Assembly (NCBI RefSeq): GCF_032444005.1 | Contig: NC_091291.1 | Span: forward strand, 138,012,001 to 138,076,000 | Reading direction: 5' to 3' | From: Ranitomeya imitator | Lineage: Eukaryota | Length of the DNA stretch: 64,000 nt | Part shown: in pieces, positions 15,051-54,321 of the stretch | How the letters are laid out: each line of letters starts with the position of its first letter | Position numbering within the stretch: position 1 is the first letter of the stretch | Made by a program: the position numbers and the translations under genes | The notes under the pieces: generated by a model | The model's database searches: none | Told to the model about the DNA's origin: nothing | The model's input: only the letters and a program-made list of their open reading frames with translations

Positions 15051-15489
15051 TTATGACCTAGGGGTGCACTGTTTTTTGTTACAGGTCCTCCAACTGGTTG
15101 CGAAGATACTTCCGGATAAGGGAGTCTTCTGATTGCGTCGGTATGTTCCATGACGCATATGAAAGCCTGGGATTGATTGGCAGCGTGGTGTTTATATTTC
15201 CATGTGGAGGAGAGACGATTGGAGGATATAGCCATGATGACCGCGTCACCTGATCTTGACAGCTGGAGTCTCTACGATTTATGGCGCATTTATATATAAT
15301 AGTGGGGAATATTTACCTTATGTATACATGTTCAATACTAGGGCTGGGAGATTTTTAATAGGTATATGTTTGATGTTTGTTTTAACTTTTGTAAGATGTT
15401 AATTATGTGGTGGTGGGCGGCTTGCTAGTGATTGGTGCCCTGTGTGGCACATATGCTATTTATAGCCGGACCTGTGCACTGCAGGGTAT

Positions 15490-15684: not shown

Positions 15685-18600
15685 CACAGCTGCAGAGCCG
15701 ACACTACATCAGGGTCGGGGTGCAGAGGTAATGACCACAACCGCAGAGCCGACACTGCATCAGGGCCGGGGTGCAGAGGTAATGACCACAACCGCAGAGC
15801 CGGCACTCCATCAGGGCCGGGGTGCAGAGGTAATGACCACAACCGCAGAGCCGGCACTCCATCAGGGCCGGGGTGCAGAGGTAATGACCACAGCCGCAGA
15901 GCCAGCACTACATCAGGGCCGGGGTGCAGAGGTAATGACCACAACCGCAGAGCCGACACTGCATCAGGGCCGGGGTGCAGAGGTAATGACCACAGCCGCA
16001 GAGCCGGCACTACATCAGGGCCGGGGTGCAGAGGTAATGACCACAGCGCAGAGCCGACACTACATCAGGGCCGGGGTGCAGAGGTAATGACCAGAGCCGA
16101 CACTACATCAGGGCCAGGGAGCAGAGGTAATGACCACAGCCGCAGAGTCGGCACTACATCAGGGCCGGGGTGCAGAGGTAATGACCACAACCGCAGAGTC
16201 GGCACTACATCAGGGCCGGGGTGCAGAGGTAATGACCACAGCGCAGAGCCGACACTACATCAGGGTCGGGGTGCAGAGGTAATGACCACAACCGCAGAGC
16301 AGACACTACATCAGGGCCGGGGAGCAGAGGTAATGACCACAACCGCAGAGCAGACACTACATCAGGGCCGGGGTGCAGAGGTAATGACCACAACCGCAGA
16401 GCCGACACTGCATCAGGGCCGGGGTGCAGAGGTAATGACCACAGCCGCAGAGCCGACACTACATCAGGGCCGGGGTGCAGAGGTAATGACCACAGCCGCA
16501 GAGCCGACACTACATCAGGGCCGGGGTGCAGAGGTAATGACCACAACCGCAGAGCCGACACTGCATCAGGGCCGGGGCGCAGAGGTAATGACCACAGCGC
16601 AGAGCCGACACTACATCAGGGCCGGGGTGCAGAGGTAATGACCACAACCGCAGAGCCGGCACTACATCAGGGCCGGGGTGCAGAGGTAATGACCACAGCC
16701 GCAGAGCCGACACTACATCAGGGCCGGGGTGCAGAGGTAATGACCACAACCGCAGAGCCGGCACTACATCAGGGCCGGGGTGCAGAGGTAATGACCACAA
16801 CCGCAGAGCCGGCACTACATCAGGGCCGGGGTGCAGAGGTAATGACCACAGCGCAGAGCCGACACTACATCAGGGTCGGGGTGCAGAGGTAATGACCACA
16901 ACCGCAGAGCAGACACTACATCAGGGCCGGGGTGCAGAGGTAATGACCACAACCGCAGAGCCGACACTGCATCAGGGCCGGGGTGCAGAGGTAATGACCA
17001 CAGCCGCAGAGCCGACACTACATCAGGGCCGGGGTGCAGAGGTAATGACCACAACCGCAGAGCCGGCACTACATCAGGGCCGGGGTGCAGAGGTAATGAC
17101 CACAGCCGCAGAGCCGACACTACATCAGGGCTGGGGTGCAGAGGTAATGACCACAACCGCAGAGCCGACACTACATCAGGGCCGGGGTGCAGAGGTAATG
17201 ACCACAACCGCAGAGCCGGCACTACATCAGGGCCGGGGTGCAGAGGTAATGACCACAGCCGCAGAGCCGACACTACATCAGGGCCGGGGTGCAGAGGTAA
17301 TGACCACAACTGCAGAGCCGGCACTACATCAGGGCCGGGGTGCAGAGGTAATGACCACAACCGCAGAGCCGGCACTACATCAGGGCCGGGGTGCAGAGGT
17401 AATGACCACAGCGCAGAGCCGACACTACATCAGGGTCGGGGTGCAGAGGTAATGACCACAACCGCAGAGCCGGCACTACATCAGGGCCAGGGAGCAGAGG
17501 TAATGACCACAGCCGCAGGGCCGACACTACATCAGGGCCAGGGAGCAGAGGTAATGACCAGAGCCGACACTACATCAGGGCCGGGGAGCAGAGGTAATGA
17601 CCACAGCCGCAGAGCCGACACTACATCAGGGTCGGGGTGCAGAGGTAATGACCACAGCCGCAGAGCCGACACTACATCAGGGTCGGGGTGCAGAGGTAAT
17701 GACCACAGCCGCAGAGCCGACACTACATCAGGGTCGGGGTGCAGAGGTAATGACCACAGCCGCAGAGCCGACACTACATCAGGGCCGGGGTGCAGAGGTA
17801 ATGACCACAACCGCAGAGCCGGCACTACATCAGGGCCGGGGTGCAGAGGTAATGACCACAGCCGCAGAGCCGACACTACATCAGGGCCGGGGTGCAGAGG
17901 TAATGACCACAGCCGCAGAGCCGACACTACATCAGGGCCGGGGTGCAGAGGTAATGACCACAGCCGCAGAGCCGGCACTACATCAGGGCCAGGGAGCAGA
18001 GGTAATGACCACAGCCGCAGAGCCGGCACTACATCAGGGCCGGGGTGCAGAGGTAATGACCACAGCCGCAGAGCCGACACTACATCAGGGCCAGGGAGCA
18101 GAGGTAATGACCAGAGCCGACACTACATCAAGGCCAGGGAGCAGAGGTAATGACCAGAGCAGACACTGCATCAAGGCCAGGGAGCAGAGGTAATGACCAG
18201 AGCCGGCACTACATCAGGGTCGGGGTGCAGAGGTAATGACCACAGCCGCAGAGCCGACACTACATCAGGGCCGGGGTGCAGAGGTAATGACCACAGCCGC
18301 AGAGCCGACACTACATCAGGGCCGGGGTGCAGAGGTAATGACCACAGCCGCAGAGCCGACACTACATCAGGGCCAGGGAGCAGAGGTAATGACCAGAGCC
18401 GACACTACATCAAGGCCAGGGAGCAGAGGTAATGACCAGAGCAGACACTGCATCAAGGCCAGGGAGCAGAGGTAATGACCAGAGCCGGCACTACATCAGG
18501 GTCGGGGTGCAGAGGTAATGACCACAGCCGCAGAGCCGACACTACATCAGGGCCGGGGTGCAGAGGTAATGACCACAGCCGCAGAGCCGACACTACATCA

Positions 18601-19727
18601 GGGCCGGGGTGCAGAGGTAATGACCACAGCCGCAGAGCCGACACTACATCAGGGCCAGGGAGCAGAGGTAATGACCAGAGCCGACACTACATCAGGGCCA
18701 GGGAGCAGAGGTAATGACCAGAGCAGACACTGCATCATTGCCGGGGAGCAGAGGTAATGACCAGAGCCGGCACTACATCAGGGTCGGGGTGCAGAGGTAA
18801 TGACCACAGCCGCAGAGCCGACACTGCATCAGGGTCGGGGTGCAGAGGTAATGACCACAGCCGCAGAGCCGGCACTACATCAGGGCCGGGGTGCAGAGGT
18901 AATGACCACAGCCGCAGAGCCGACACTACATCAGGGCCGGGGTGCAGAGGTAATGACCACAGCCGCAGAGCCGACACTGCATCAGGGTCGGGGTGCAGAG
19001 GTAATGACCACAGCCGCAGGGCCGGCACTACATCAGGGCCGGGGTGCAGAGGTAATGACCACAGCCGCAGAGCCGGCACTACATCAGGGCCGGGGTGCAG
19101 AGGTAATGACCAGAGCCGACACTACATCAGGGCCGGGGTGCAGAGGTAATGACCACAGCCGCAGGGCCGGCACCACATCAGGGCCGGGGTGCAGAGGTAA
19201 TGACCACAACCGCAGAGCCGACACTGCATCAGGGTCAGGGTGCAGAGGTAATGACCACAGCCGCAGAGCCGACACTACATCAGGGCCGGGGTGCAGAGGT
19301 AATGACCACAGCCGCAGAGCAGACACTGCATCATTGCCGGGGTGCAGAGGTAATGACCACAGCCGCAGAGCCGACACTACATCAGGGTCGGGGAGCAGAG
19401 GTAATGACCACAGCCGCAGAGCCGACACTACATCAGGGTCAGGGTGCAGAGGTAATGACCACAGCCGCAGAGCAGACACTACATCAGGGCCGGGGTGCAG
19501 AGGTAATGACCACAGCCGCAGAGCCGACACTACATCAGGGTCAGGGTGCAGAGGTAATGACCACAGCCGCAGAGCAGACACTACATCAGGGCCGGGGAGC
19601 AGAGGTAATGACCACAGCCGCAGAGCCGACACTGCATCAGGGTCGGGGTGCAGAGGTAATGACCAGAGCCGGCACTACATCAGGGTCGGGGTGCAGAGGT
19701 AATGACCACAGCCGCAGAGCCGACACC
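15685..19727. repeat. 51-bp minisatellite, main block (~80 units, with 43-bp variant units)
   Basis: Continuous tandem array; 282-bp higher-order periodicity around 18100-18800. Confidence 0.97.
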
Positions 19728-20635
19728 ATCAAGGTAGTAAAAATGGATCTTTATTCCATAGAAGACAATTACAAGGTGTTTTGGGGTCTGGATTTTAACC
19801 CCCTCGTGACTGAAGCCGCTCAGTGACCACAAGGATAAAAAAAATAAATAGATTTTTTGCACATGATTTACATAATTCGGAGCGTTGTGTTGTGTGAACG
19901 GTGGCGATAATCAGGGATCATCAATTCCCCACATTAAAAAAATCCATGCAAAAGTTTTTTTCCCTTTCTCCGGGTGACAAGTGATATGGCGACTATCACT
20001 GCTCGTGCGGGGGTTGTCACAGCTCGTCAGAGACCCTTGGATGTAAAATCTGCCTTAATTTCTATGTATTGTGGGAAGCCCCCCTCATAAAGCAGCGTGT
20101 AGCAATGTATCCCCCTCGCTGTGTACTCGGCTGCCACTATGGCCACCACCGCGGCTCCTACAGATACAGTCCGCTATTATTATTATTTTACACCCAGAAA
20201 CAGCGCCCCTCTTTGGCTATGGGCTGTTGCGGTATTGCAGCACTTTACACTGAAATACCAGACACAGCCGCCTGTCCAAGGTTAAGCTGTTTCTGAGAAA
20301 ATATAAAGAGCCTTTAAAATGTCAGACTGCCCCTTTAAAACATGTCTGCTTTCTTGCAGATACAGCGCCACACAGGTACACAGGCTTAGTCTGGTATTGC
20401 AGCTCAGATCCATTGTAGAGGATGAGACTGAGCTGCAGTACCACACTCAACCAGTTGACAGAGGTGGCGCTATTTCTGGAAGAAAGCAGTTGCACAGTGT
20501 TTCCCACCACCCCGTCCCCCTGTAAGTCAGGACTCTGGGAAAGCTGGATGACAACCCCTGCAGGCGTCGAGCAGTTTTTCTGCTACCGCTATAAAATAAT
20601 GGGATAGAAGTTGTAACCAAAGCTGACATTTTTCT

Positions 20636-20641
20636 TTTATT
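20636..20641 (-). terminator. Candidate NPPA polyadenylation signal (AATAAA)
   Basis: AATAAA on the minus strand about 75 nt after the exon-3 stop. Confidence 0.6.
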
Positions 20642-20713
20642 TTTGGGGGGGTTGATTGTCCCATTAAGGTGACGGCGCGGCCCCCCGCAGTCGTCCCCGG
20701 TCGTCTCTTAATC

Positions 20714-20746
20714 CTACGCTTGTTGAGCTTCGCTTTCTCTTGAAAA
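20714..20746 (-). CDS. NPPA: Atrial natriuretic peptide precursor, exon 3 (FSRESEAQQA-stop)
   Basis: Strong acceptor CTTCTTCTTTCCACAG, nearly identical to the NPPB exon-3 acceptor. Phase 0, first codon TTT (Phe) completes GCGRRF; AATAAA follows. Confidence 0.75.
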   Translation of the reverse strand, partial: FSRESEAQQA

Positions 20747-21284
20747 CTGTGGAAAGAAGAAGAACAAGAAGGTTTTACTGAATGCACATGAAGCACAATG
20801 GGAGACAGGAAAGCGGGGGCGACGCTGCGCAGACACTGGGGGGGCTTCTCGGAGGGGATTGATTTACCCCTCGCTCATCATTGTGTCTAATAATGAAACA
20901 CATAGAAAAACGCAGAAATAAAGGTCTAATGAAGAACATCGATTATTGTGCGCGGCATCTCCATTGTTGACGCCTCTAACCACAGTCAATATATATAGAT
21001 AAATATATATATATATGTGTGTGTGCAGCGGGGGATGGTAATCGCCTCAGGGAGCTTTCTTTATGTAGTAGTAACTGAAGTATGCCTTAAGCCTTTGATT
21101 TCCCCCTTAAGTGGTCAGAAATCTACAGCTGCGGCCTTCAACTGTCATGGCATGCTAGGGGTTGCAGTTTCACAGTATCTGGAGAGTGATAATTTCTAGA
21201 CTACGGTACTTTATTAACTTCTCTGCTGATTCTTTTCAAATATGTCTGAATCTTGTATTTCTTTTTAACTTGAAAGACGTGAAA

Positions 21285-23215
21285 TTACCCCCTAGTGGTG
21301 GCTGTATAAATCTGTATGTAGTGAGCTCCCTCTAGTGGTGACTGTATAAATCTGTATGTAGTGAGCTCCCTCTAGTGGTGACTGTATAAATCTGTATGTA
21401 GTGAGCTCCCTCTAGTGGTGACTGTATAAATCTGTATGTAGTGAGCGCCCTCTAGTGGTGACTGTATAAATCTGTAAGTAGTGAGCTCCCTCTAGTGGTG
21501 ACTGTATAAATCTGTATATAGTGAGCGCCCTCTAGTGGTGGCTGTATAAATCTGTATGTAGTGAGCTCCCTCTAGTGGTGACTGTATAAATCTGTATGTA
21601 GTGAGCTCCCTCTAGTGGTGACTGTATAAATCTGTATGTAGAGAGCTCCCTCTAGTGGTGACTGTATAAATCTGTATGTAGTGAGCTCCCCCTAGTGGTG
21701 ACTGTATAAATCTGTATGTAGTGAGCTCCCCCTAGTGGTGGCTGTATAAATCTGTATGTAGTGAGCTTCTCCTGGTGGTGGATGTATAAATCTGTATATA
21801 GTGAGCGCCCTCTAGTGGTGGCTGTATAAATCTGTATATAGTGAGCGCCCTCTAGTGGTGGCTGTATAAATCTGTATGTAGTGAGCTCCCTCTAGTGGTG
21901 ACTGTATAAATCTGTATGTAGTGAGCTCCCTCTAGTGGTGACTGTATAAATCTGTATGTAGAGAGCTCCCTCTAGTGGTGACTGTATAAATCTGTATGTA
22001 GTGAGCTCCCCCTAGTGGTGACTGTATAAATCTGTATGTAGTGAGCTCCCCCTAGTGGTGGCTGTATAAATCTGTATGTAGTGAGCTTCTCCTGGTGGTG
22101 GATGTATAAATCTGTATGTAGTGAGCTCCCTCTAGTGGTGGCTATATAAATCTGTATGTAGTGAGCTCCCTCTAGTGGTGGCTGTATACATCTGTATGTA
22201 GTGAGCTCCCTCTAGTGGTGACTGTATAAATCTGTATGTAGTGAGCTCCCTCTAGTGGTGACTGTATAAATCTGTATATAGTGAGCGCCCTCTAGTGGTG
22301 GCTGTATAAATCTGTATGTAGTGAGCTCCTTCTAGTGGTGGCTGTATAAATCTATATGTAGTGAGCTCCCTCTAGTGGTGGCTGTATACATCTGTATGTA
22401 GTGAGCTCCCTCTAGTGGTGGCTGTATAAATCTATATGTAGTGAGCTCTCCCTAGTGGTGACTGTATAAATCTGTATGTAGTGAGCTCCTTCTAGTGGTG
22501 GCTGTATAAATCTGTATGTAGTGAGCTCCCTCTAGTGGTGGCTGTATACATCTGTATGTAGTGAGCTCCCTCTAGTGGTGGCTGTATAAATCTGTATGTA
22601 GTGAGCTCCCTCTAGTGGTGGCTGTATACATCTGTATGTAGTGAGCTCCCTCTAGTGGTGACTGTATAAATCTGTATGTAGTGAGCTCCCTCTAGTGGTG
22701 ACTGTATAAATCTGTATATAGTGAGCGCCCTCTAGTGGTGGCTGTATAAATCTGTATGTAGTGAGCTCCTTCTAGTGGTGGCTGTATAAATCTATATGTA
22801 GTGAGCTCCCTCTAGTGGTGGCTGTATAAATCTATATGTAGTGAGCTCTCCCTAGTGGTGACTGTATAAATCTGTATGTAGTGAGCTCCTTCTAGTGGTG
22901 GCTGTATAAATCTGTATGTAGTGAGCTCCCTCTAGTGGTGGCTGTATACATCTGTATGTAGTGAGCTCCCTCTAGTGGTGGCTGTATAAATCTGTATGTA
23001 GTGAGCTCCCTCTAGTGGTGGCTGTATACATCTGTATGTAGTGAGCTCCCTCTAGTGGTGACTGTATAAATCTGTATGTAGTGAGCTCCTTCTAGTGGTG
23101 GCTGTATAAATCTGTATGTAGTGAGCTCCCTCTAGTGGTGACTGTATAAATCTGTATGTAGTGAGCTCCCCCTAGTGGTGGCTGTATAAGTCTTTATGTA
23201 GTGAGCTCCCCCTAG
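21285..23215. repeat. 40-bp minisatellite in NPPA intron 2 (~48 units; GTGAGCTCCCTCTAGTGGTGACTGTATAAATCTGTATGTA)
   Basis: Tandem array. The minus strand of each unit reads CCACTAGAGGG(A/C)GCT. Confidence 0.97.
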
Positions 23216-23753
23216 TGTTGGTTGCAGATAACTGTTATGGTGTTGTCAAGCAGAGAAAGTAATTTAAAGCACAGTTTACAATCAGTGAATTTTAAAGGAA
23301 CCTGTCACATCCAGAAAAGCTTTTTACTTGAAGGTATCGCATTAATCTGGAGGAAACCTTCACATTCCCCCTCCAGTAATTTTATATCTGCAAGTAAATA
23401 GCGTTTGAGAACCTGAATAGATTGCAACTTGTCAGAGCTGAGGATTTGTTACAAGTGTATCCAGTCTGTGAGACAAAGTGGTATCTCCGTTGTCCAGGTT
23501 GTGACATTGTATCAGTGCAGGCAAATTGTATCACAAATGATTGTGTCAACTGTAGCAAACCCCCAGCTGTGAGAAATATTGGCCACGGATGAGATTACAA
23601 CCCCGGATACAAAGAAGAATTCGTTATAATTGGCTTTGAGTTTTCAGGAAAGTTTCCCAACGATTCTAGATCTCGACTTCCCTCACTTGCTACTGTGTCA
23701 CTGTGGATATTAGGAGGGGGCATTATGGCGTTTAAAGACCCCCTGATCCTTAC

Positions 23754-24077
23754 CCGGCGGCCGCAGCCCATGCCACTCTGAGAGCCAATCCTGTCAATCC
23801 GAGAGCCGAAGCAATCTGAAGACCTCCGCATGCTCCGGGGGGCATTGAGCAGCTCGCGCAGCTTGTTCTTCAGTGGAGAGATCTTCTCAGGCGGAGTCCA
23901 GGACCCTCTGCTGTAGCCCATGTCTGCGGGGGGCCGGGCGGCTTCTCCAGCCCATGATGGAGCTGAATTAGAAGACTGGAGGGGATCGGACGAATCATAG
24001 TTTCCAATAAACAAGTCTTGACCTTGGACTTCTGGTTCTTCTACGGGAAGTTTATCTTCTAAACGTTCTAGGAGACC
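23754..24077 (-). CDS. NPPA: Atrial natriuretic peptide precursor, exon 2
   Basis: TTTCTGTAG|GLLERLEDKLP...RELLNAPRSMRR-SSDCFGSRIDRIGSQSGMGCGRR|GTAAGG. 324 nt, 17-aa disulfide ring, closely resembles frog ANP. Confidence 0.97.
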
Positions 24078-28002: not shown

Positions 28003-28119
28003 CTTTAGATCGGACAGGTCTGATGATATCATGGAGCTGTACGCTGGACCTCCATGGACCTTGGTCAACGCCAGAAGAAGCAGAAGGCAAGTAAAGTCCC
28101 CAAGGATTGAAGTCCCCAT
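28003..28119 (-). CDS. NPPA: Atrial natriuretic peptide precursor, exon 1 (signal peptide)
   Basis: ATG MGTSILGDFTCLLLLLALTKVHGGPAYSSMISSDLSDLK|GTAAGA. 39 codons, phase 0, joins exon 2 in frame. Confidence 0.95.
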
Positions 28120-32147: not shown

Positions 32148-33218
32148 CTGTGGAAAGAAAAGAAGAATTATAAAACAAAACTGGGAAAAAGAAGGAGGAA
32201 GAAACCGTCGCTACGGAGGAAACCGTGTATGAAGGGGCCTTAGCAACCAATCTGACCTCAGCTTTCATGTTCTAAGCTGCATTGGTTGCTATGGGAAACA
32301 AGGTCCAGGTGGAGGCAGCCATTTTGACTGTACACCCCATCATTAATAATGGTCTATCTGGCAAAATATCTGCCACCAATGTGTGGGGAGGTGATTGTGC
32401 ATCCATGTACAATACATTTGGGACTAAAATTGTCCTGGTGATAAAAATGGCCACCAATAATGATAACATGGCCACCATTGATGATAGCGTGGCCACCATT
32501 GTCGATAACAACCGTTCAGAGTGCGGAATGTAAGCTGGTTGCTATGGGCAACAAGGTTAATCAGGGTATGAGGCCTACTGGTGGTCACGCTGACGTGGAG
32601 AGTACCGTATATACTGTATGTATATATATATATACACATAGTGTGTGTGGTGAAAGCTACTTAAAAGAAAATGGTGGAAATCATGAGGTAATTTGTATCT
32701 ACAAAGGAATTTGTTGAAGTACTTGACAAATACTGATGACATGGAGGTCATTTTCTCCTGAACTACGATACGTCTTTATCTAATACATATGGCGCTATTA
32801 TTCAGCCATGCTCAGACATAGCAGAGCTGTGTTTGCCATCTGGCTCAGCTCATGGTGACATCGTCATGTCTTTTACATAGGACTGCAGGATACAACAAAT
32901 TCAGCTCTGCGACCTTTGTATCTACACGACATATATCATTATAATGACTATTCTCTCCAGGTCGTGGTCTATATCATGTAACAGGCGCTCTGCCAGCTGC
33001 TGCTGGGAAACTACAATTCCTATCATGCCCTATTGGGATATGCTGGGAGTTGTAGTTTGCATTGGGAACTACCCAGAACACAAAACACACAGGACCCTAC
33101 GTAGCAAGTCGAGTCATGTATATCTGTGCAATGGCTGGAGCAGGACTCCCAGTATCCCCTGGCTGGGACTTGTAGTTCCCCTTGTGACAACAGAACAATA
33201 ACATTGCTCTCCTCTTAC

Positions 33219-33510
33219 CGTTACAGCCCAGTCCACTGAAGGAATCGATTCTGTCAATCCTTCTCCCGAAGCAGCCTGAACCCCTCATCATCTTGGGGCT
33301 CTGCAGCGATCGCAGCCCTTTGAGGAAGGAGTCGTTGATGGAGATGGTCTTGCCGGGGTTCGCCCCTCTGGACTCTGGTAACTGGGCTCCAGCCTCTTCT
33401 GGGGTCATCGCTTGAGTGCGATCGTCCAGTCTGGTCTCCAGGACACTGGGATTTGATTGTTGTAAATCTTCAATGGCTGACAGCTTCTCCTCCAATCTCT
33501 CCAGGACGTC
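33219..33510 (-). CDS. NPPB: B-type natriuretic peptide precursor, exon 2
   Basis: ATACACAG|DVLERLEEKL...GLRSLQSPKMMRGSGCFGRRIDRIDSFSGLGCN-G|GTAAGA. The SPKM motif before the ring is BNP-like. Confidence 0.96.
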
Positions 33511-53988: not shown

Positions 53989-54021
53989 TTCTTGTGATTT
54001 TTACCAACTCACCAGGAAACG

Positions 54022-54321
54022 TCAGCAGCCGAGACCACTGAGTGATCCGATCCTGTCCAGCTTCACCCCGAAGCATCCCCTGGAGAAGCCCTTCTTGCTC
54101 CTCTGCCGCAGCCTCCTGGTGCCGCCCGCCGGGTCGCTGAGCAGCTGCTGCAGGGTGACTTCATTTAAGTGGGAACCTTCCCTCTGCTCGGCCCGGTTTC
54201 TGTTCCACTGGTTTTCGGGGTTCGGCTGGTCCAGCAAGTCAGTTGGTACCAACTCCCCATGATCTGCTTCGTCAGACCCATAGGAGCGGTCAAAATTGTC
54301 CTCCAGTAACCTGGACAAACT
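54022..54321 (-). CDS. NPPC: C-type natriuretic peptide precursor (CNP3 paralogue), exon 2
   Basis: CTCTTGTAG|[11 protein letters not shown]...[28 protein letters not shown]-stop, a CNP-22 with no C-terminal tail. Tandem linkage with NPPB/NPPA indicates the CNP3 lineage rather than the mammalian NPPC (CNP4) orthologue. Confidence 0.95.

What the first reader, a model, noticed from the sequence alone, without database searches (positions are those of the whole stretch)
20714..20746. Predicted ANP carries a 9-residue C-terminal extension (...GCGRRF-SRESEAQQA)
Exon 2 ends in phase 0 after CGC CGG. The only convincing downstream acceptor opens TTT TCA AGA..., so the codon after Phe is TCA, one base from TAA or TGA. 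Frog ANPs I recall end at GR(R)F. Tail length affects natriuretic peptide receptor binding and clearance (long-tailed VNP and DNP, and the frameshift-extended human ANP). RFSR is an R-X-X-R convertase-type site, so the tail might be trimmed. The exon choice and the novelty are inference.
Basis: partly seen in the sequence, partly recalled or inferred. Interest (0 to 1): 0.75.

Follow-up and report, generated by a model that had tools for sequence, protein, structure and literature searches.

The report
Frog ANP tail from stop-codon loss
The heart-hormone (ANP) gene of this poison frog really does encode nine extra residues at its end, but the same tail, made when a stop codon was lost long ago, occurs in all 13 frogs of its superfamily (Hyloidea) examined and is already in public databases.

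Summary
On the minus strand, NPPA exon 2 ends at 23754 (...GCGRR). The acceptor at 20746 opens TTT TCA ... and reads FSRESEAQQA, then TAG at 20716-20714.

Spliced contigs from three public runs (three studies) carry exactly the 23754|20746 junction. The three exons translate without a mismatch to RefSeq XP_069597886.1, "natriuretic peptides A [Ranitomeya imitator]".

The tail is not new.
- All 13 hyloid frogs examined (7 families) end ...GCGRRF-SRES[EQ]..., with tails of 8-11 residues. They include a Rhinella marina GenBank record (AAL27433, taken here to be a cloned cDNA).
- No non-hyloid anuran has this tail.
- Outgroup DNA reads TTT/TAT TGA (Xenopus, Spea, Mixophyes) where hyloids read TTT TCA/TCC. 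The tail therefore arose from a TGA>TCA stop loss read into the old 3'UTR.
- The codons for F-S-R-E-S differ only by synonymous changes (4 of 4, P about 0.001). The distal part is loosely conserved.

The one feature specific to this genome is a CAG>TAG change at 20716 that removes the last two residues. One nearly identical RNA contig still reads CAG, so the change may be polymorphic.

Whether the tail is clipped at the invariant RRFSR|ES site or kept on the hormone is untested. The feature is real, ordinary and already databased. The natural parallel to human extended ANP (MANP) gives it modest interest.

The parts
28003..28119 (-). NPPA exon 1 coding part (Met to ...SDLSDLK, 39 residues: signal peptide and start of the pro-region)
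   Evidence: tblastn of P0030 (RefSeq R. imitator NPPA), residues 1-39, 100% identity
23754..24077 (-). NPPA exon 2 (108 codons, phase 0 at both ends): pro-region and the ANP ring, ending ...GMGCGRR
   Evidence: Translation. Pfam PF00212 ANP, 42.1 bits against a cut-off of 27. 100% identity to P0030 residues 40-147.
23754..23822 (-). Exon-2 part of the predicted hormone, SSDCFGSRIDRIGSQSGMGCGRR (17-residue ring between the two Cys)
   Evidence: Read. The N-terminal boundary is set by analogy with frog ANP-24, from my own knowledge, not tested here.
20747..23753 (-). Intron 2 (3007 nt, gt...ag). It holds a minisatellite of 40 nt x 48 copies at 21288-23221.
   Evidence: Sequence. TRF. No contig lies on 20762-21270.
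20714..20746 (-). Coding part of exon 3: Phe, the nine-residue tail SRESEAQQA, and the TAG stop
   Evidence: Translation. The junction is seen in contigs of runs X1, X7 and X8. Matches P0030 residues 148-157.
20741..20743 (-). TCA (Ser) codon at the position of the ancestral TGA stop: the stop-loss site
   Evidence: Xenopus, Spea and Mixophyes have TGA and Mantella has TAA at this codon. Four hyloid genomes have TCA or TCC.
20732..20746 (-). Codons F-S-R-E-S. With the two Arg at the end of exon 2 they form the invariant RRFSR|ES motif (an R-X-X-R site; the Ser also fits S-x-E).
   Evidence: Invariant in 13 of 13 hyloid proteins. The four nucleotide changes among four hyloid DNAs are all synonymous, P about 0.001.
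20714..20716 (-). TAG stop, derived from CAG (Gln). The base at 20716 (+ strand A) reads G in runs X1 and X8.
   Evidence: table 3. Other dendrobatids and all other hyloids with this position have Q here.
20708..20710 (-). TAA, the ancestral hyloid stop, two codons past the new TAG
   Evidence: Aligned with the TAA of Dendropsophus, Leptodactylus and Eleutherodactylus
19733..20713 (-). 3'UTR. AATAAA at 20641-20636 (72 nt after the stop) and at 19755-19750. Contigs run through the first signal, and one ends near 19731.
   Evidence: table 8 (record lengths and coordinates). (polyadenylation signal scan). The 3' end itself is inferred.

Best explanation
This is the NPPA (atrial natriuretic peptide) gene of Ranitomeya imitator. 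It has three exons on the minus strand, and the small last coding exon adds Phe plus a short acidic tail to the hormone precursor.

Shown here:
- The 23754|20746 splice exists in RNA-derived contigs.
- The tail is shared by all hyloid frogs examined and is absent from other anurans.
- It arose when the ancestral TGA stop after the terminal Phe/Tyr became TCA (Ser), so translation ran about 11 codons into the former purine-rich 3'UTR to a TAA.
- The first tail residues (RRF-SRES) are held by selection on the amino-acid sequence. The distal residues drift and have shortened several times.
- In this genome a CAG>TAG change removes the last two residues (nine instead of eleven). The change is young and may be polymorphic.

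Inferred, not shown:
- The invariant stretch R-R-F-S-R|E-S is a proprotein-convertase-type site (Arg at P1, P4 and P5), like the RAPR|S site that I recall furin using on proBNP in cardiomyocytes.
- I think it most likely (about 50%) that the acidic distal piece is clipped in the secretory pathway and the exposed Arg is removed. The hormone would then end ...GCGRRFS(R).
- The next most likely reading (about 35%) is that the whole tail stays on the circulating peptide.
For: Junction: contigs of X1 (depth 573), X7 and X8, from three studies, lie on 20300-20747. They continue with 30 letters that occur once in the window, at + 23755-23784. There is zero coverage of the intron side 20762-21270.

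Identity: exons 1, 2 and 3 translate with 100% identity to P0030 = XP_069597886.1. Pfam ANP domain. BNP-like and CNP-like exons lie upstream on the same strand.

Distribution: the tail SRES[EQ]... is found in Ranitomeya (2 species), Dendrobates, Phyllobates, Anomaloglossus, Rhinella, Bufo (2 species), Leptodactylus, Engystomops, Hyla, Dendropsophus and Rhinoderma. It is also in Eleutherodactylus coqui genomic DNA at L006:14488-14517. Pseudophryne, Mixophyes, Hyperolius, Mantella, Spea, Pelobates, Ascaphus and Xenopus end at ..R[FY].

Stop loss: TTT TGA in Xenopus and Spea, TAT TGA in Mixophyes, and TTC TAA in Mantella, against TTT TCA/TCC in four hyloids directly after a conserved acceptor.

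Selection: 4 of 4 changes in the F-S-R-E-S codons are synonymous, with 2.67 synonymous sites out of 15, P about 0.001.

TAG is derived: X1 (1 difference in 448 nt) and X8 read CAG, X7 reads TAG. All other hyloids with this position have Gln.
Against: Nothing contradicts the gene structure or the stop-loss origin. The functional half is untested. No peptide data were found, and the open literature searched holds nothing on the hyloid tail. The R-X-X-R site has no basic P2 and has Glu at P1', so its cleavage is not assured. Human extended ANP (MANP) circulates uncut (PMC9219923). The runs are coded, their kind is only guessed as RNA, and the tissue is unknown. Only the spliced form shows that the contigs come from RNA. 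Contigs drop rare isoforms, and I did not lay reads across the repeat-bearing part of the intron, so minor alternative last exons are not excluded. The selection test rests on five codons in four species.
Confidence: 0.85

Rival explanations
1. The full tail stays on the secreted hormone. Hyloid ANP would then be a naturally long-tailed natriuretic peptide (13 residues after the ring, against 4-5 in other frogs and mammals) that still activates its receptor but is degraded or cleared more slowly, like the human 12-residue-extended MANP.
For: MANP binds GC-A and NPR-C like ANP but resists neprilysin and lasts longer (review PMC9219923). No hyloid examined has a tail shorter than 8 residues. The tail has been kept as an open frame across seven families.
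Against: Only the proximal SRES is demonstrably constrained, and the distal part varies and shortens. That pattern fits a recognition site better than a bulk protective tail. The expected number of nonsense hits under neutrality is too low for the kept length to prove selection (my estimate). No peptide evidence was found.
Confidence: 0.35
2. The tail is a tolerated passenger of a stop-codon loss with no function of its own. Its conservation would reflect constraint on the RNA (a purine-rich exonic splicing enhancer just after the acceptor of a tiny coding exon, or a 3'UTR element) rather than on the peptide.
For: The purine-rich stretch right after the acceptor is already present in the 3'UTR of Xenopus and Spea. 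Hyloid conservation continues some way past the stop. The distal tail drifts and has been truncated four times without the reading frame being lost.
Against: All four changes in the F-S-R-E-S codons fall on synonymous positions (P about 0.001). RNA-level constraint does not predict this. SRES is invariant in 13 of 13 species from 7 families.
Confidence: 0.1
3. The exon 3 choice is a gene-model artefact, and the real transcript ends with Phe plus a stop elsewhere, or reads into intron 2.
For: Automatic models of some other frogs do read into the intron or splice to unrelated exons. Examples are bullfrog isoform X1 P0011, Logan P0014, the older R. imitator model P0001, and the Rhinophrynus and Pelodytes models.
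Against: Three spliced contigs from three studies show the junction. No other acceptor gives F/Y plus a stop. The same exon is found in four hyloid genomes, and the same tail is in the Rhinella marina GenBank protein record.
Confidence: 0.02

Closest known systems
RefSeq XP_069597886.1, natriuretic peptides A [Ranitomeya imitator] (P0030)
   Same: Identical to the three exons of the window, including the ending ...GCGRRFSRESEAQQA.
   Different: Nothing. It is the public annotation of this very gene. An older model of the species (CAJ0937033.1, P0001) is chimeric with a dispersed repeat.
Rhinella marina (cane toad) ANP precursor, GenBank AAL27433 / UniProt Q90X61, and NPPA of other hyloids (Bufo, Hyla, Dendropsophus, Leptodactylus, Engystomops, Rhinoderma, Dendrobates, Phyllobates, Anomaloglossus)
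   Same: Same gene, same hormone region, same tail start RRF-SRES, and an acidic, Gln-rich continuation.
   Different: These tails have 10-11 residues (...AQQ[AV]Q[DNEK]). The window's is cut to 9 by CAG>TAG. E. coqui has 8, through a deletion.
ANP of non-hyloid frogs (Xenopus, Spea, Mixophyes, Mantella models here; Rana ANP-24 from my own knowledge)
   Same: Orthologous three-exon gene, same ring, and a last coding exon that begins with the terminal Phe/Tyr codon.
   Different: A stop (TGA or TAA) follows directly after Phe/Tyr, so there is no tail.
Human mutant ANP (MANP, frameshift in familial atrial fibrillation). Also, from my own knowledge, the common stop-to-Arg variant rs5065.
   Same: Loss of the normal stop extends ANP at its C-terminus into 3'UTR-encoded residues, 12 in MANP (PMC9219923).
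   Different: The human alleles are rare or polymorphic, MANP is disease-linked, and its tail sequence is unrelated. The hyloid tail is fixed in a whole superfamily, partly under purifying selection, and carries an R-X-X-R motif.
Long-tailed natriuretic peptides: DNP from mamba venom (15-residue tail, PMC9219923) and eel VNP (my own knowledge)
   Same: A ring followed by a long C-terminal tail.
   Different: These are different paralogues and the tails are not homologous. Their tails are shown to be on the mature peptide, which is unknown here.
C-terminal trimming of rodent proANP (two terminal Arg removed; my own knowledge)
   Same: A precedent for precursor residues after the hormone's last residue that are removed before secretion.
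   Different: Only two basic residues are removed, by a carboxypeptidase. No endoproteolytic step is needed.

Membership tests
Natriuretic peptide family (Pfam PF00212) / NPPA orthologue | 17-residue ring C-F-G-x-x-x-D-R-I-x-x-x-S-G-x-G-C, and a Pfam ANP hit above the gathering score | tested here: met
   CFGSRIDRIGSQSGMGC in exon 2. PF00212 42.1 bits against a cut-off of 27.
Natriuretic peptide family (Pfam PF00212) / NPPA orthologue | Best matches are annotated NPPA of related species, with identity over the full length | tested here: met
   100% to R. imitator NPPA P0030 over three exons. 64-98% to NPPA of 25 other anurans.
Natriuretic peptide family (Pfam PF00212) / NPPA orthologue | Three-exon structure with a last coding exon that carries only the terminal residue(s) | tested here: met
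   Exons at 28119-28003, 24077-23754 and 20746-20714. Junction 2/3 is seen in contigs. Junction 1/2 was not checked with reads.
Natriuretic peptide family (Pfam PF00212) / NPPA orthologue | Linkage with NPPB (and CNP3) in one cluster | tested here: met
   BNP-like exon at 33507-33211 and CNP-like exon at 54153-54019, both on the minus strand
Natriuretic peptide family (Pfam PF00212) / NPPA orthologue | Expression in the heart | not testable with these tools
   Runs are coded and their tissue is unknown. One spliced contig has depth 573.
Hyloid tailed ANP precursors | Ser codon (TCN) in place of the stop after the terminal Phe, followed by R-E-S | tested here: met
   TTT TCA AGA GAA AGC. The same is found in 13 of 13 hyloids.
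Long-tailed mature natriuretic peptides (VNP, DNP, MANP) | The long tail is present on the secreted, circulating peptide | not testable with these tools
   Only the precursor is known. No peptide data were found.
Proprotein-convertase substrates (R-X-X-R site) | Motif R-X-X-R present and conserved | tested here: met
   R-F-S-R, with a further Arg at P5, invariant in 13 of 13 hyloids
Proprotein-convertase substrates (R-X-X-R site) | Cleavage after the P1 Arg actually occurs | not testable with these tools
   Needs peptidomics or in vitro digestion

The most novel reading that the evidence does not exclude
For tens of millions of years, hyloid frogs have carried a fixed, selected counterpart of the human stop-loss ANP (MANP). 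The tail, or a regulated fraction of it, would stay on the hormone. The invariant RRFSR|ES stretch would then work as a switch: convertase cleavage, possibly tuned by phosphorylation of the S-x-E serine, as I recall for the furin site of FGF23. That switch would set how long-lived the circulating ANP is. As far as the open literature searched goes, the stop-loss origin and its restriction to Hyloidea have not been described.
Probability: 0.25. Interest if true: 0.55.

Novelty: already known. Interest (0 to 1): 0.3.

Why it matters
For genome annotation it does not matter, because the gene and its tail are already in RefSeq.

The comparative result has modest value.
- It dates a stop-codon loss in a major cardiovascular hormone to the base of one frog superfamily.
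- It shows that the first residues gained from the 3'UTR came under protein-level selection.
- It offers a natural counterpart to MANP, the extended human ANP now developed as a long-acting drug.

If the tail is retained, hyloid ANPs would be ready-made test cases for how tail sequence affects neprilysin resistance and NPR-C clearance. If it is clipped, they show how a new processing site can neutralise a stop-loss.

There is also a practical lesson for annotation. Several frog NPPA models miss or mis-join this tiny exon: E. coqui P0008, R. imitator P0001 and bullfrog isoform X1.

Tried and rejected
1. Another exon 3. I scanned all 366 AG dinucleotides from 23753 down to 19000 on the minus strand. 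None gives Phe/Tyr plus a stop, and 20746 has by far the best pyrimidine tract. Rejected.

2. Exon 3 DNA of the closest relatives. R. variabilis, D. tinctorius, Phyllobates, Pseudophryne and the older R. imitator assembly were listed without DNA because the files are too large. The CAG>TAG change therefore rests on protein models and on the contigs.

3. Reads across the whole intron. I laid the runs on 20300-21270 only and read the junction from the loose ends.

4. Literature. Five searches of the open library found no paper on a toad or hyloid ANP tail. The comparative-endocrinology papers on Bufo ANP that I recall are in subscription journals and could not be checked.

5. The older R. imitator model P0001, with its 55-residue continuation after ...AQQA. 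That part maps to a dispersed repeat present three times in the window, so the model is chimeric.

6. Extensions in the Rhinophrynus, Pelodytes, Sphenodon and bullfrog X1 models. They are unrelated in sequence to the hyloid tail and found in one species each. The bullfrog and Sphenodon tails begin with Val (GTN) right after the last exon 2 codon, which looks like intron read-through. This is inference and was not checked.

The identical database protein P0030 was used instead.

8. No structure prediction was run. A 9-residue tail on a small peptide would give nothing reliable.

Full report
**Observation**

On the minus strand the window carries an ANP-type exon, 24077-23754. It has 108 codons in phase 0 at both ends and finishes ...SSDCFGSRIDRIGSQSGMGCGRR, followed by gtaagg. 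It hits Pfam PF00212 with 42.1 bits against a cut-off of 27.

About 3 kb downstream, after ttcttctttccacag, the sequence reads TTT TCA AGA GAA AGC GAA GCT CAA CAA GCG TAG GAT TAA, which translates to FSRESEAQQA and a stop.

**Is that exon used?**

- Of the 366 AG dinucleotides scanned from 23753 down to 19000 (intron 2 and the region downstream), the one before 20746 has the best pyrimidine tract (90%). No other AG gives Phe/Tyr followed by a stop.
- Intron 2 is long only because it holds a minisatellite of 40 nt x 48 copies at 21288-23221. This was also noted by an earlier entry of the scan (s1-312596).
- I searched public runs with exon 2. I then laid four of them on 20300-21270, keeping off the minisatellite because the tool turns long repeats away.
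- In three runs from three studies (X1, X7, X8), one contig each covers 20300-20747 and nothing covers 20762-21270.
- Each of these contigs then continues with the same 30 letters. Those letters occur once in the window, at + strand 23755-23784, directly next to the exon 2 donor.
- The one-base overlap (C on the + strand at both 20747 and 23754) is resolved by the GT-AG rule. The junction 23754|20746 is therefore real.
- A contig lacking the 3-kb intron can only come from RNA, although the runs' kind is on record only as a guess.

**Identity**

- Exon 2 is 99% identical to R. imitator protein P0001 and 98% identical to R. variabilis P0002.
- The cluster of the R. variabilis protein holds P0030 = XP_069597886.1, "natriuretic peptides A [Ranitomeya imitator]", 157 residues, ending ...GCGRRFSRESEAQQA.
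- tblastn places P0030 on the window without a mismatch: residues 1-39 at 28119-28003, residues 40-147 at 24077-23754, and the tail at 20743-20717.
- BNP-like (33507-33211) and CNP-like (54153-54019) exons lie upstream on the same strand. This is the usual natriuretic peptide cluster.

**Distribution of the tail**

| Group | Species or genera | Ending |
|---|---|---|
| Dendrobatidae | R. variabilis, Phyllobates | SRESEAQQAQD |
| Dendrobatidae | D. tinctorius | SRESEAQQVQD |
| Aromobatidae | Anomaloglossus | SRESEAKQAQD |
| Bufonidae | Rhinella marina (GenBank AAL27433 / Q90X61), Bufo bufo, B. gargarizans | SRESEAQQVQN |
| Hylidae | Hyla sarda | SRESEAQNVQD |
| Hylidae | Dendropsophus | SRESEAQQAQK |
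| Leptodactylidae | Engystomops | SRESEVQQVPE |
| Leptodactylidae | Leptodactylus | SRESEGQVQN |
| Rhinodermatidae | Rhinoderma | SRESQAQVQE |
| Non-hyloids | Pseudophryne, Mixophyes, Hyperolius, Mantella, Spea, Pelobates, Ascaphus, Xenopus laevis and X. tropicalis | end at ..R[FY], no tail |

- These endings come from the protein sequences returned. All follow ...GCGRRF.
- The partial E. coqui model (Eleutherodactylidae) lacked exon 3. I found the exon in its genome at L006:14488-14517, after ttcttcttttcacag, reading FSRESQVQE and a stop.
- That makes 13 of 13 hyloid species, in 7 families, with the tail.
- A few non-hyloid models carry unrelated, single-species extensions (Rhinophrynus, Pelodytes, bullfrog isoform X1). 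They look like read-through or mis-joined models and were not checked.
- Superfamily assignments follow NCBI taxonomy.

**Origin**

| Species | Group | Start of exon 3 |
|---|---|---|
| X. tropicalis | outgroup | TTT TGA AAG AAA GAA |
| Spea | outgroup | TTT TGA AAG AAA |
| Mixophyes (Myobatrachoidea) | outgroup | TAT TGA CAG GAA GAG |
| Mantella | outgroup | TTC TAA |
| Ranitomeya, Leptodactylus, E. coqui | hyloid | TTT TCA AG[AG] GAA AG[CT] |
| Dendropsophus | hyloid | TTT TCC CGG GAA AGT |

- These sequences were obtained and aligned.
- A single G>C change in the stop codon, in the hyloid stem lineage, explains the tail.
- The purine-rich sequence now read as R-E-S-E was already present behind the stop in the outgroups.
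- All four hyloid genomes end at the same TAA.

**Constraint**

- Among the four hyloid DNAs, the five codons F-S-R-E-S show four nucleotide changes: TCA>TCC, AGG>AGA, AGG>CGG and AGT>AGC.
- All four are synonymous. Only 2.67 of the 15 sites are synonymous, so P is about 0.001 if the changes were placed at random.
- The distal residues change (E/Q, A/G/V, A/V, D/N/K/E), and the tail length is 8, 9, 10 or 11.
- Only the proximal stretch, R-R-F-S-R-E-S, is demonstrably protected at the protein level.

**What is specific to this genome**

- Where the other hyloids that keep this codon have CAG (Gln), the window has TAG, with the old TAA two codons on.
- In one search the base at 20716 (+ strand A) reads G in two runs. 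These are X1, whose contig differs from the window at this one base in 448 and whose exon 2 words match fully, and X8 (11 differences).
- X7 has no differences and keeps the TAG.
- The nonsense change is therefore young. It is either polymorphic in R. imitator or separates it from a very close relative. The run labels are coded, so I cannot tell which.
- The older R. imitator model P0001 stops using exon 3 exactly before this codon. It then continues with 55 residues that map to a dispersed repeat found three times in the window. This fits a TAG in that assembly too (inference).

**3' end**

- The contigs run on beyond 20300.
- AATAAA occurs 72 nt after the stop (20641) and 958 nt after it (19755).
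- The X7 contig ends near 19731 by my arithmetic, which fits the distal signal.
- Contigs cannot show how much the proximal site is used.

**Mechanism (inference)**

- The invariant stretch has Arg at P1, P4 and P5 of a possible cleavage R-R-F-S-R|E-S. That is a minimal furin-type R-X-X-R site, comparable with the RAPR|S site that I recall being used on proBNP in cardiomyocytes.
- Frog ANP-24, as isolated from Rana heart (my own knowledge), starts after RSMRR, so basic-site cleavage of proANP does occur in frogs.
- The tail serine also fits S-x-E and R-R-x-S kinase motifs.
- A conserved site followed by a drifting acidic spacer is the pattern of a processing signal. I therefore lean (about 50%) to clipping plus removal of the exposed Arg, leaving ...GCGRRFS(R).
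- The main rival (about 35%) is retention of the tail. By analogy with human MANP, that would leave receptor binding intact but slow degradation by neprilysin (PMC9219923).
- A neutral passenger tail (about 10%) is disfavoured by the synonymous-only pattern.
- None of this can be settled without peptide chemistry.

**Comparison and novelty**

- The gene is a plain NPPA orthologue. All the family features I could test are met.
- The tail is present in RefSeq for this species and in a Rhinella marina GenBank record, so the feature is already known at database level.
- I found no paper in the open library that discusses it. The subscription literature on toad natriuretic peptides could not be read.
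- The stop-loss origin, its restriction to Hyloidea and the selection on SRES may not have been spelled out before. They are modest comparative points.

**Limits**

- The runs are coded and held as contigs only, so tissue, expression level and rare isoforms are unknown.
- DNA of the nearest relatives was not obtainable.
- The selection test is small.
The identical database entry P0030 was used instead.

Noticed in passing
window 21288-23221: Minisatellite inside NPPA intron 2: 40-nt unit, 48.3 copies, 94% matches. It makes up about two thirds of the intron. It was already noted by the scan (s1-312596) as an array of CTCF-like motifs. I did not test that reading.
   Followed up: partly
window 18503-19726: Second tandem array: 51-nt unit, 24.8 copies, 90% matches. 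It starts just beyond the distal AATAAA of the NPPA 3'UTR, and the transcript contigs end at about its edge.
   Followed up: no
window 20716: The T of the TAG stop (A on the + strand) reads as C in the contigs of runs X1 and X8, giving CAG (Gln) and an 11-residue tail. X7 keeps TAG. X1 differs from the window at this single base in 448. This may be a stop-gain polymorphism.
   Followed up: partly
window 12024-11860 (-), 7737-7573 (-), 15086-15250 (+): Three copies of a dispersed repeat that encodes the 55 C-terminal residues of the older R. imitator 'NPPA' model CAJ0937033.1 (P0001). That model is a chimera of NPPA exons 2-3 with this repeat.
   Followed up: partly
window 20360-20490: Many unrelated contigs from all four runs match 40-60 nt here with 6-9 mismatches (table 8). 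This is probably a fragment of a common interspersed repeat inside the NPPA 3'UTR.
   Followed up: no
window 33211-33507 (-) and 54019-54153 (-): A BNP-like exon (ring GCFGRRIDRIDSFSGLGC, tail NGKR) and a CNP-like exon (ring ends GLGC followed directly by a stop) lie upstream of NPPA on the same strand. Together they form the CNP3-NPPB-NPPA cluster.
   Followed up: no
L006:14488-14517 (Eleutherodactylus coqui, CM034091.1): The annotated E. coqui NPPA protein (P0008, 'partial') lacks its last exon. The exon lies about 2.5 kb downstream of exon 2 and encodes FSRESQVQE and a stop, the shortest hyloid tail seen.
   Followed up: yes
P0011, P0014 (bullfrog), P0027 (Sphenodon), P0021 (Rhinophrynus), P0022 (Pelodytes): These NPPA models have long C-terminal extensions unrelated to the hyloid tail. 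The bullfrog and Sphenodon extensions begin with Val right after the last exon 2 codon, as expected from reading into the GT of the intron. They are probably retained-intron or mis-joined models.
   Followed up: no
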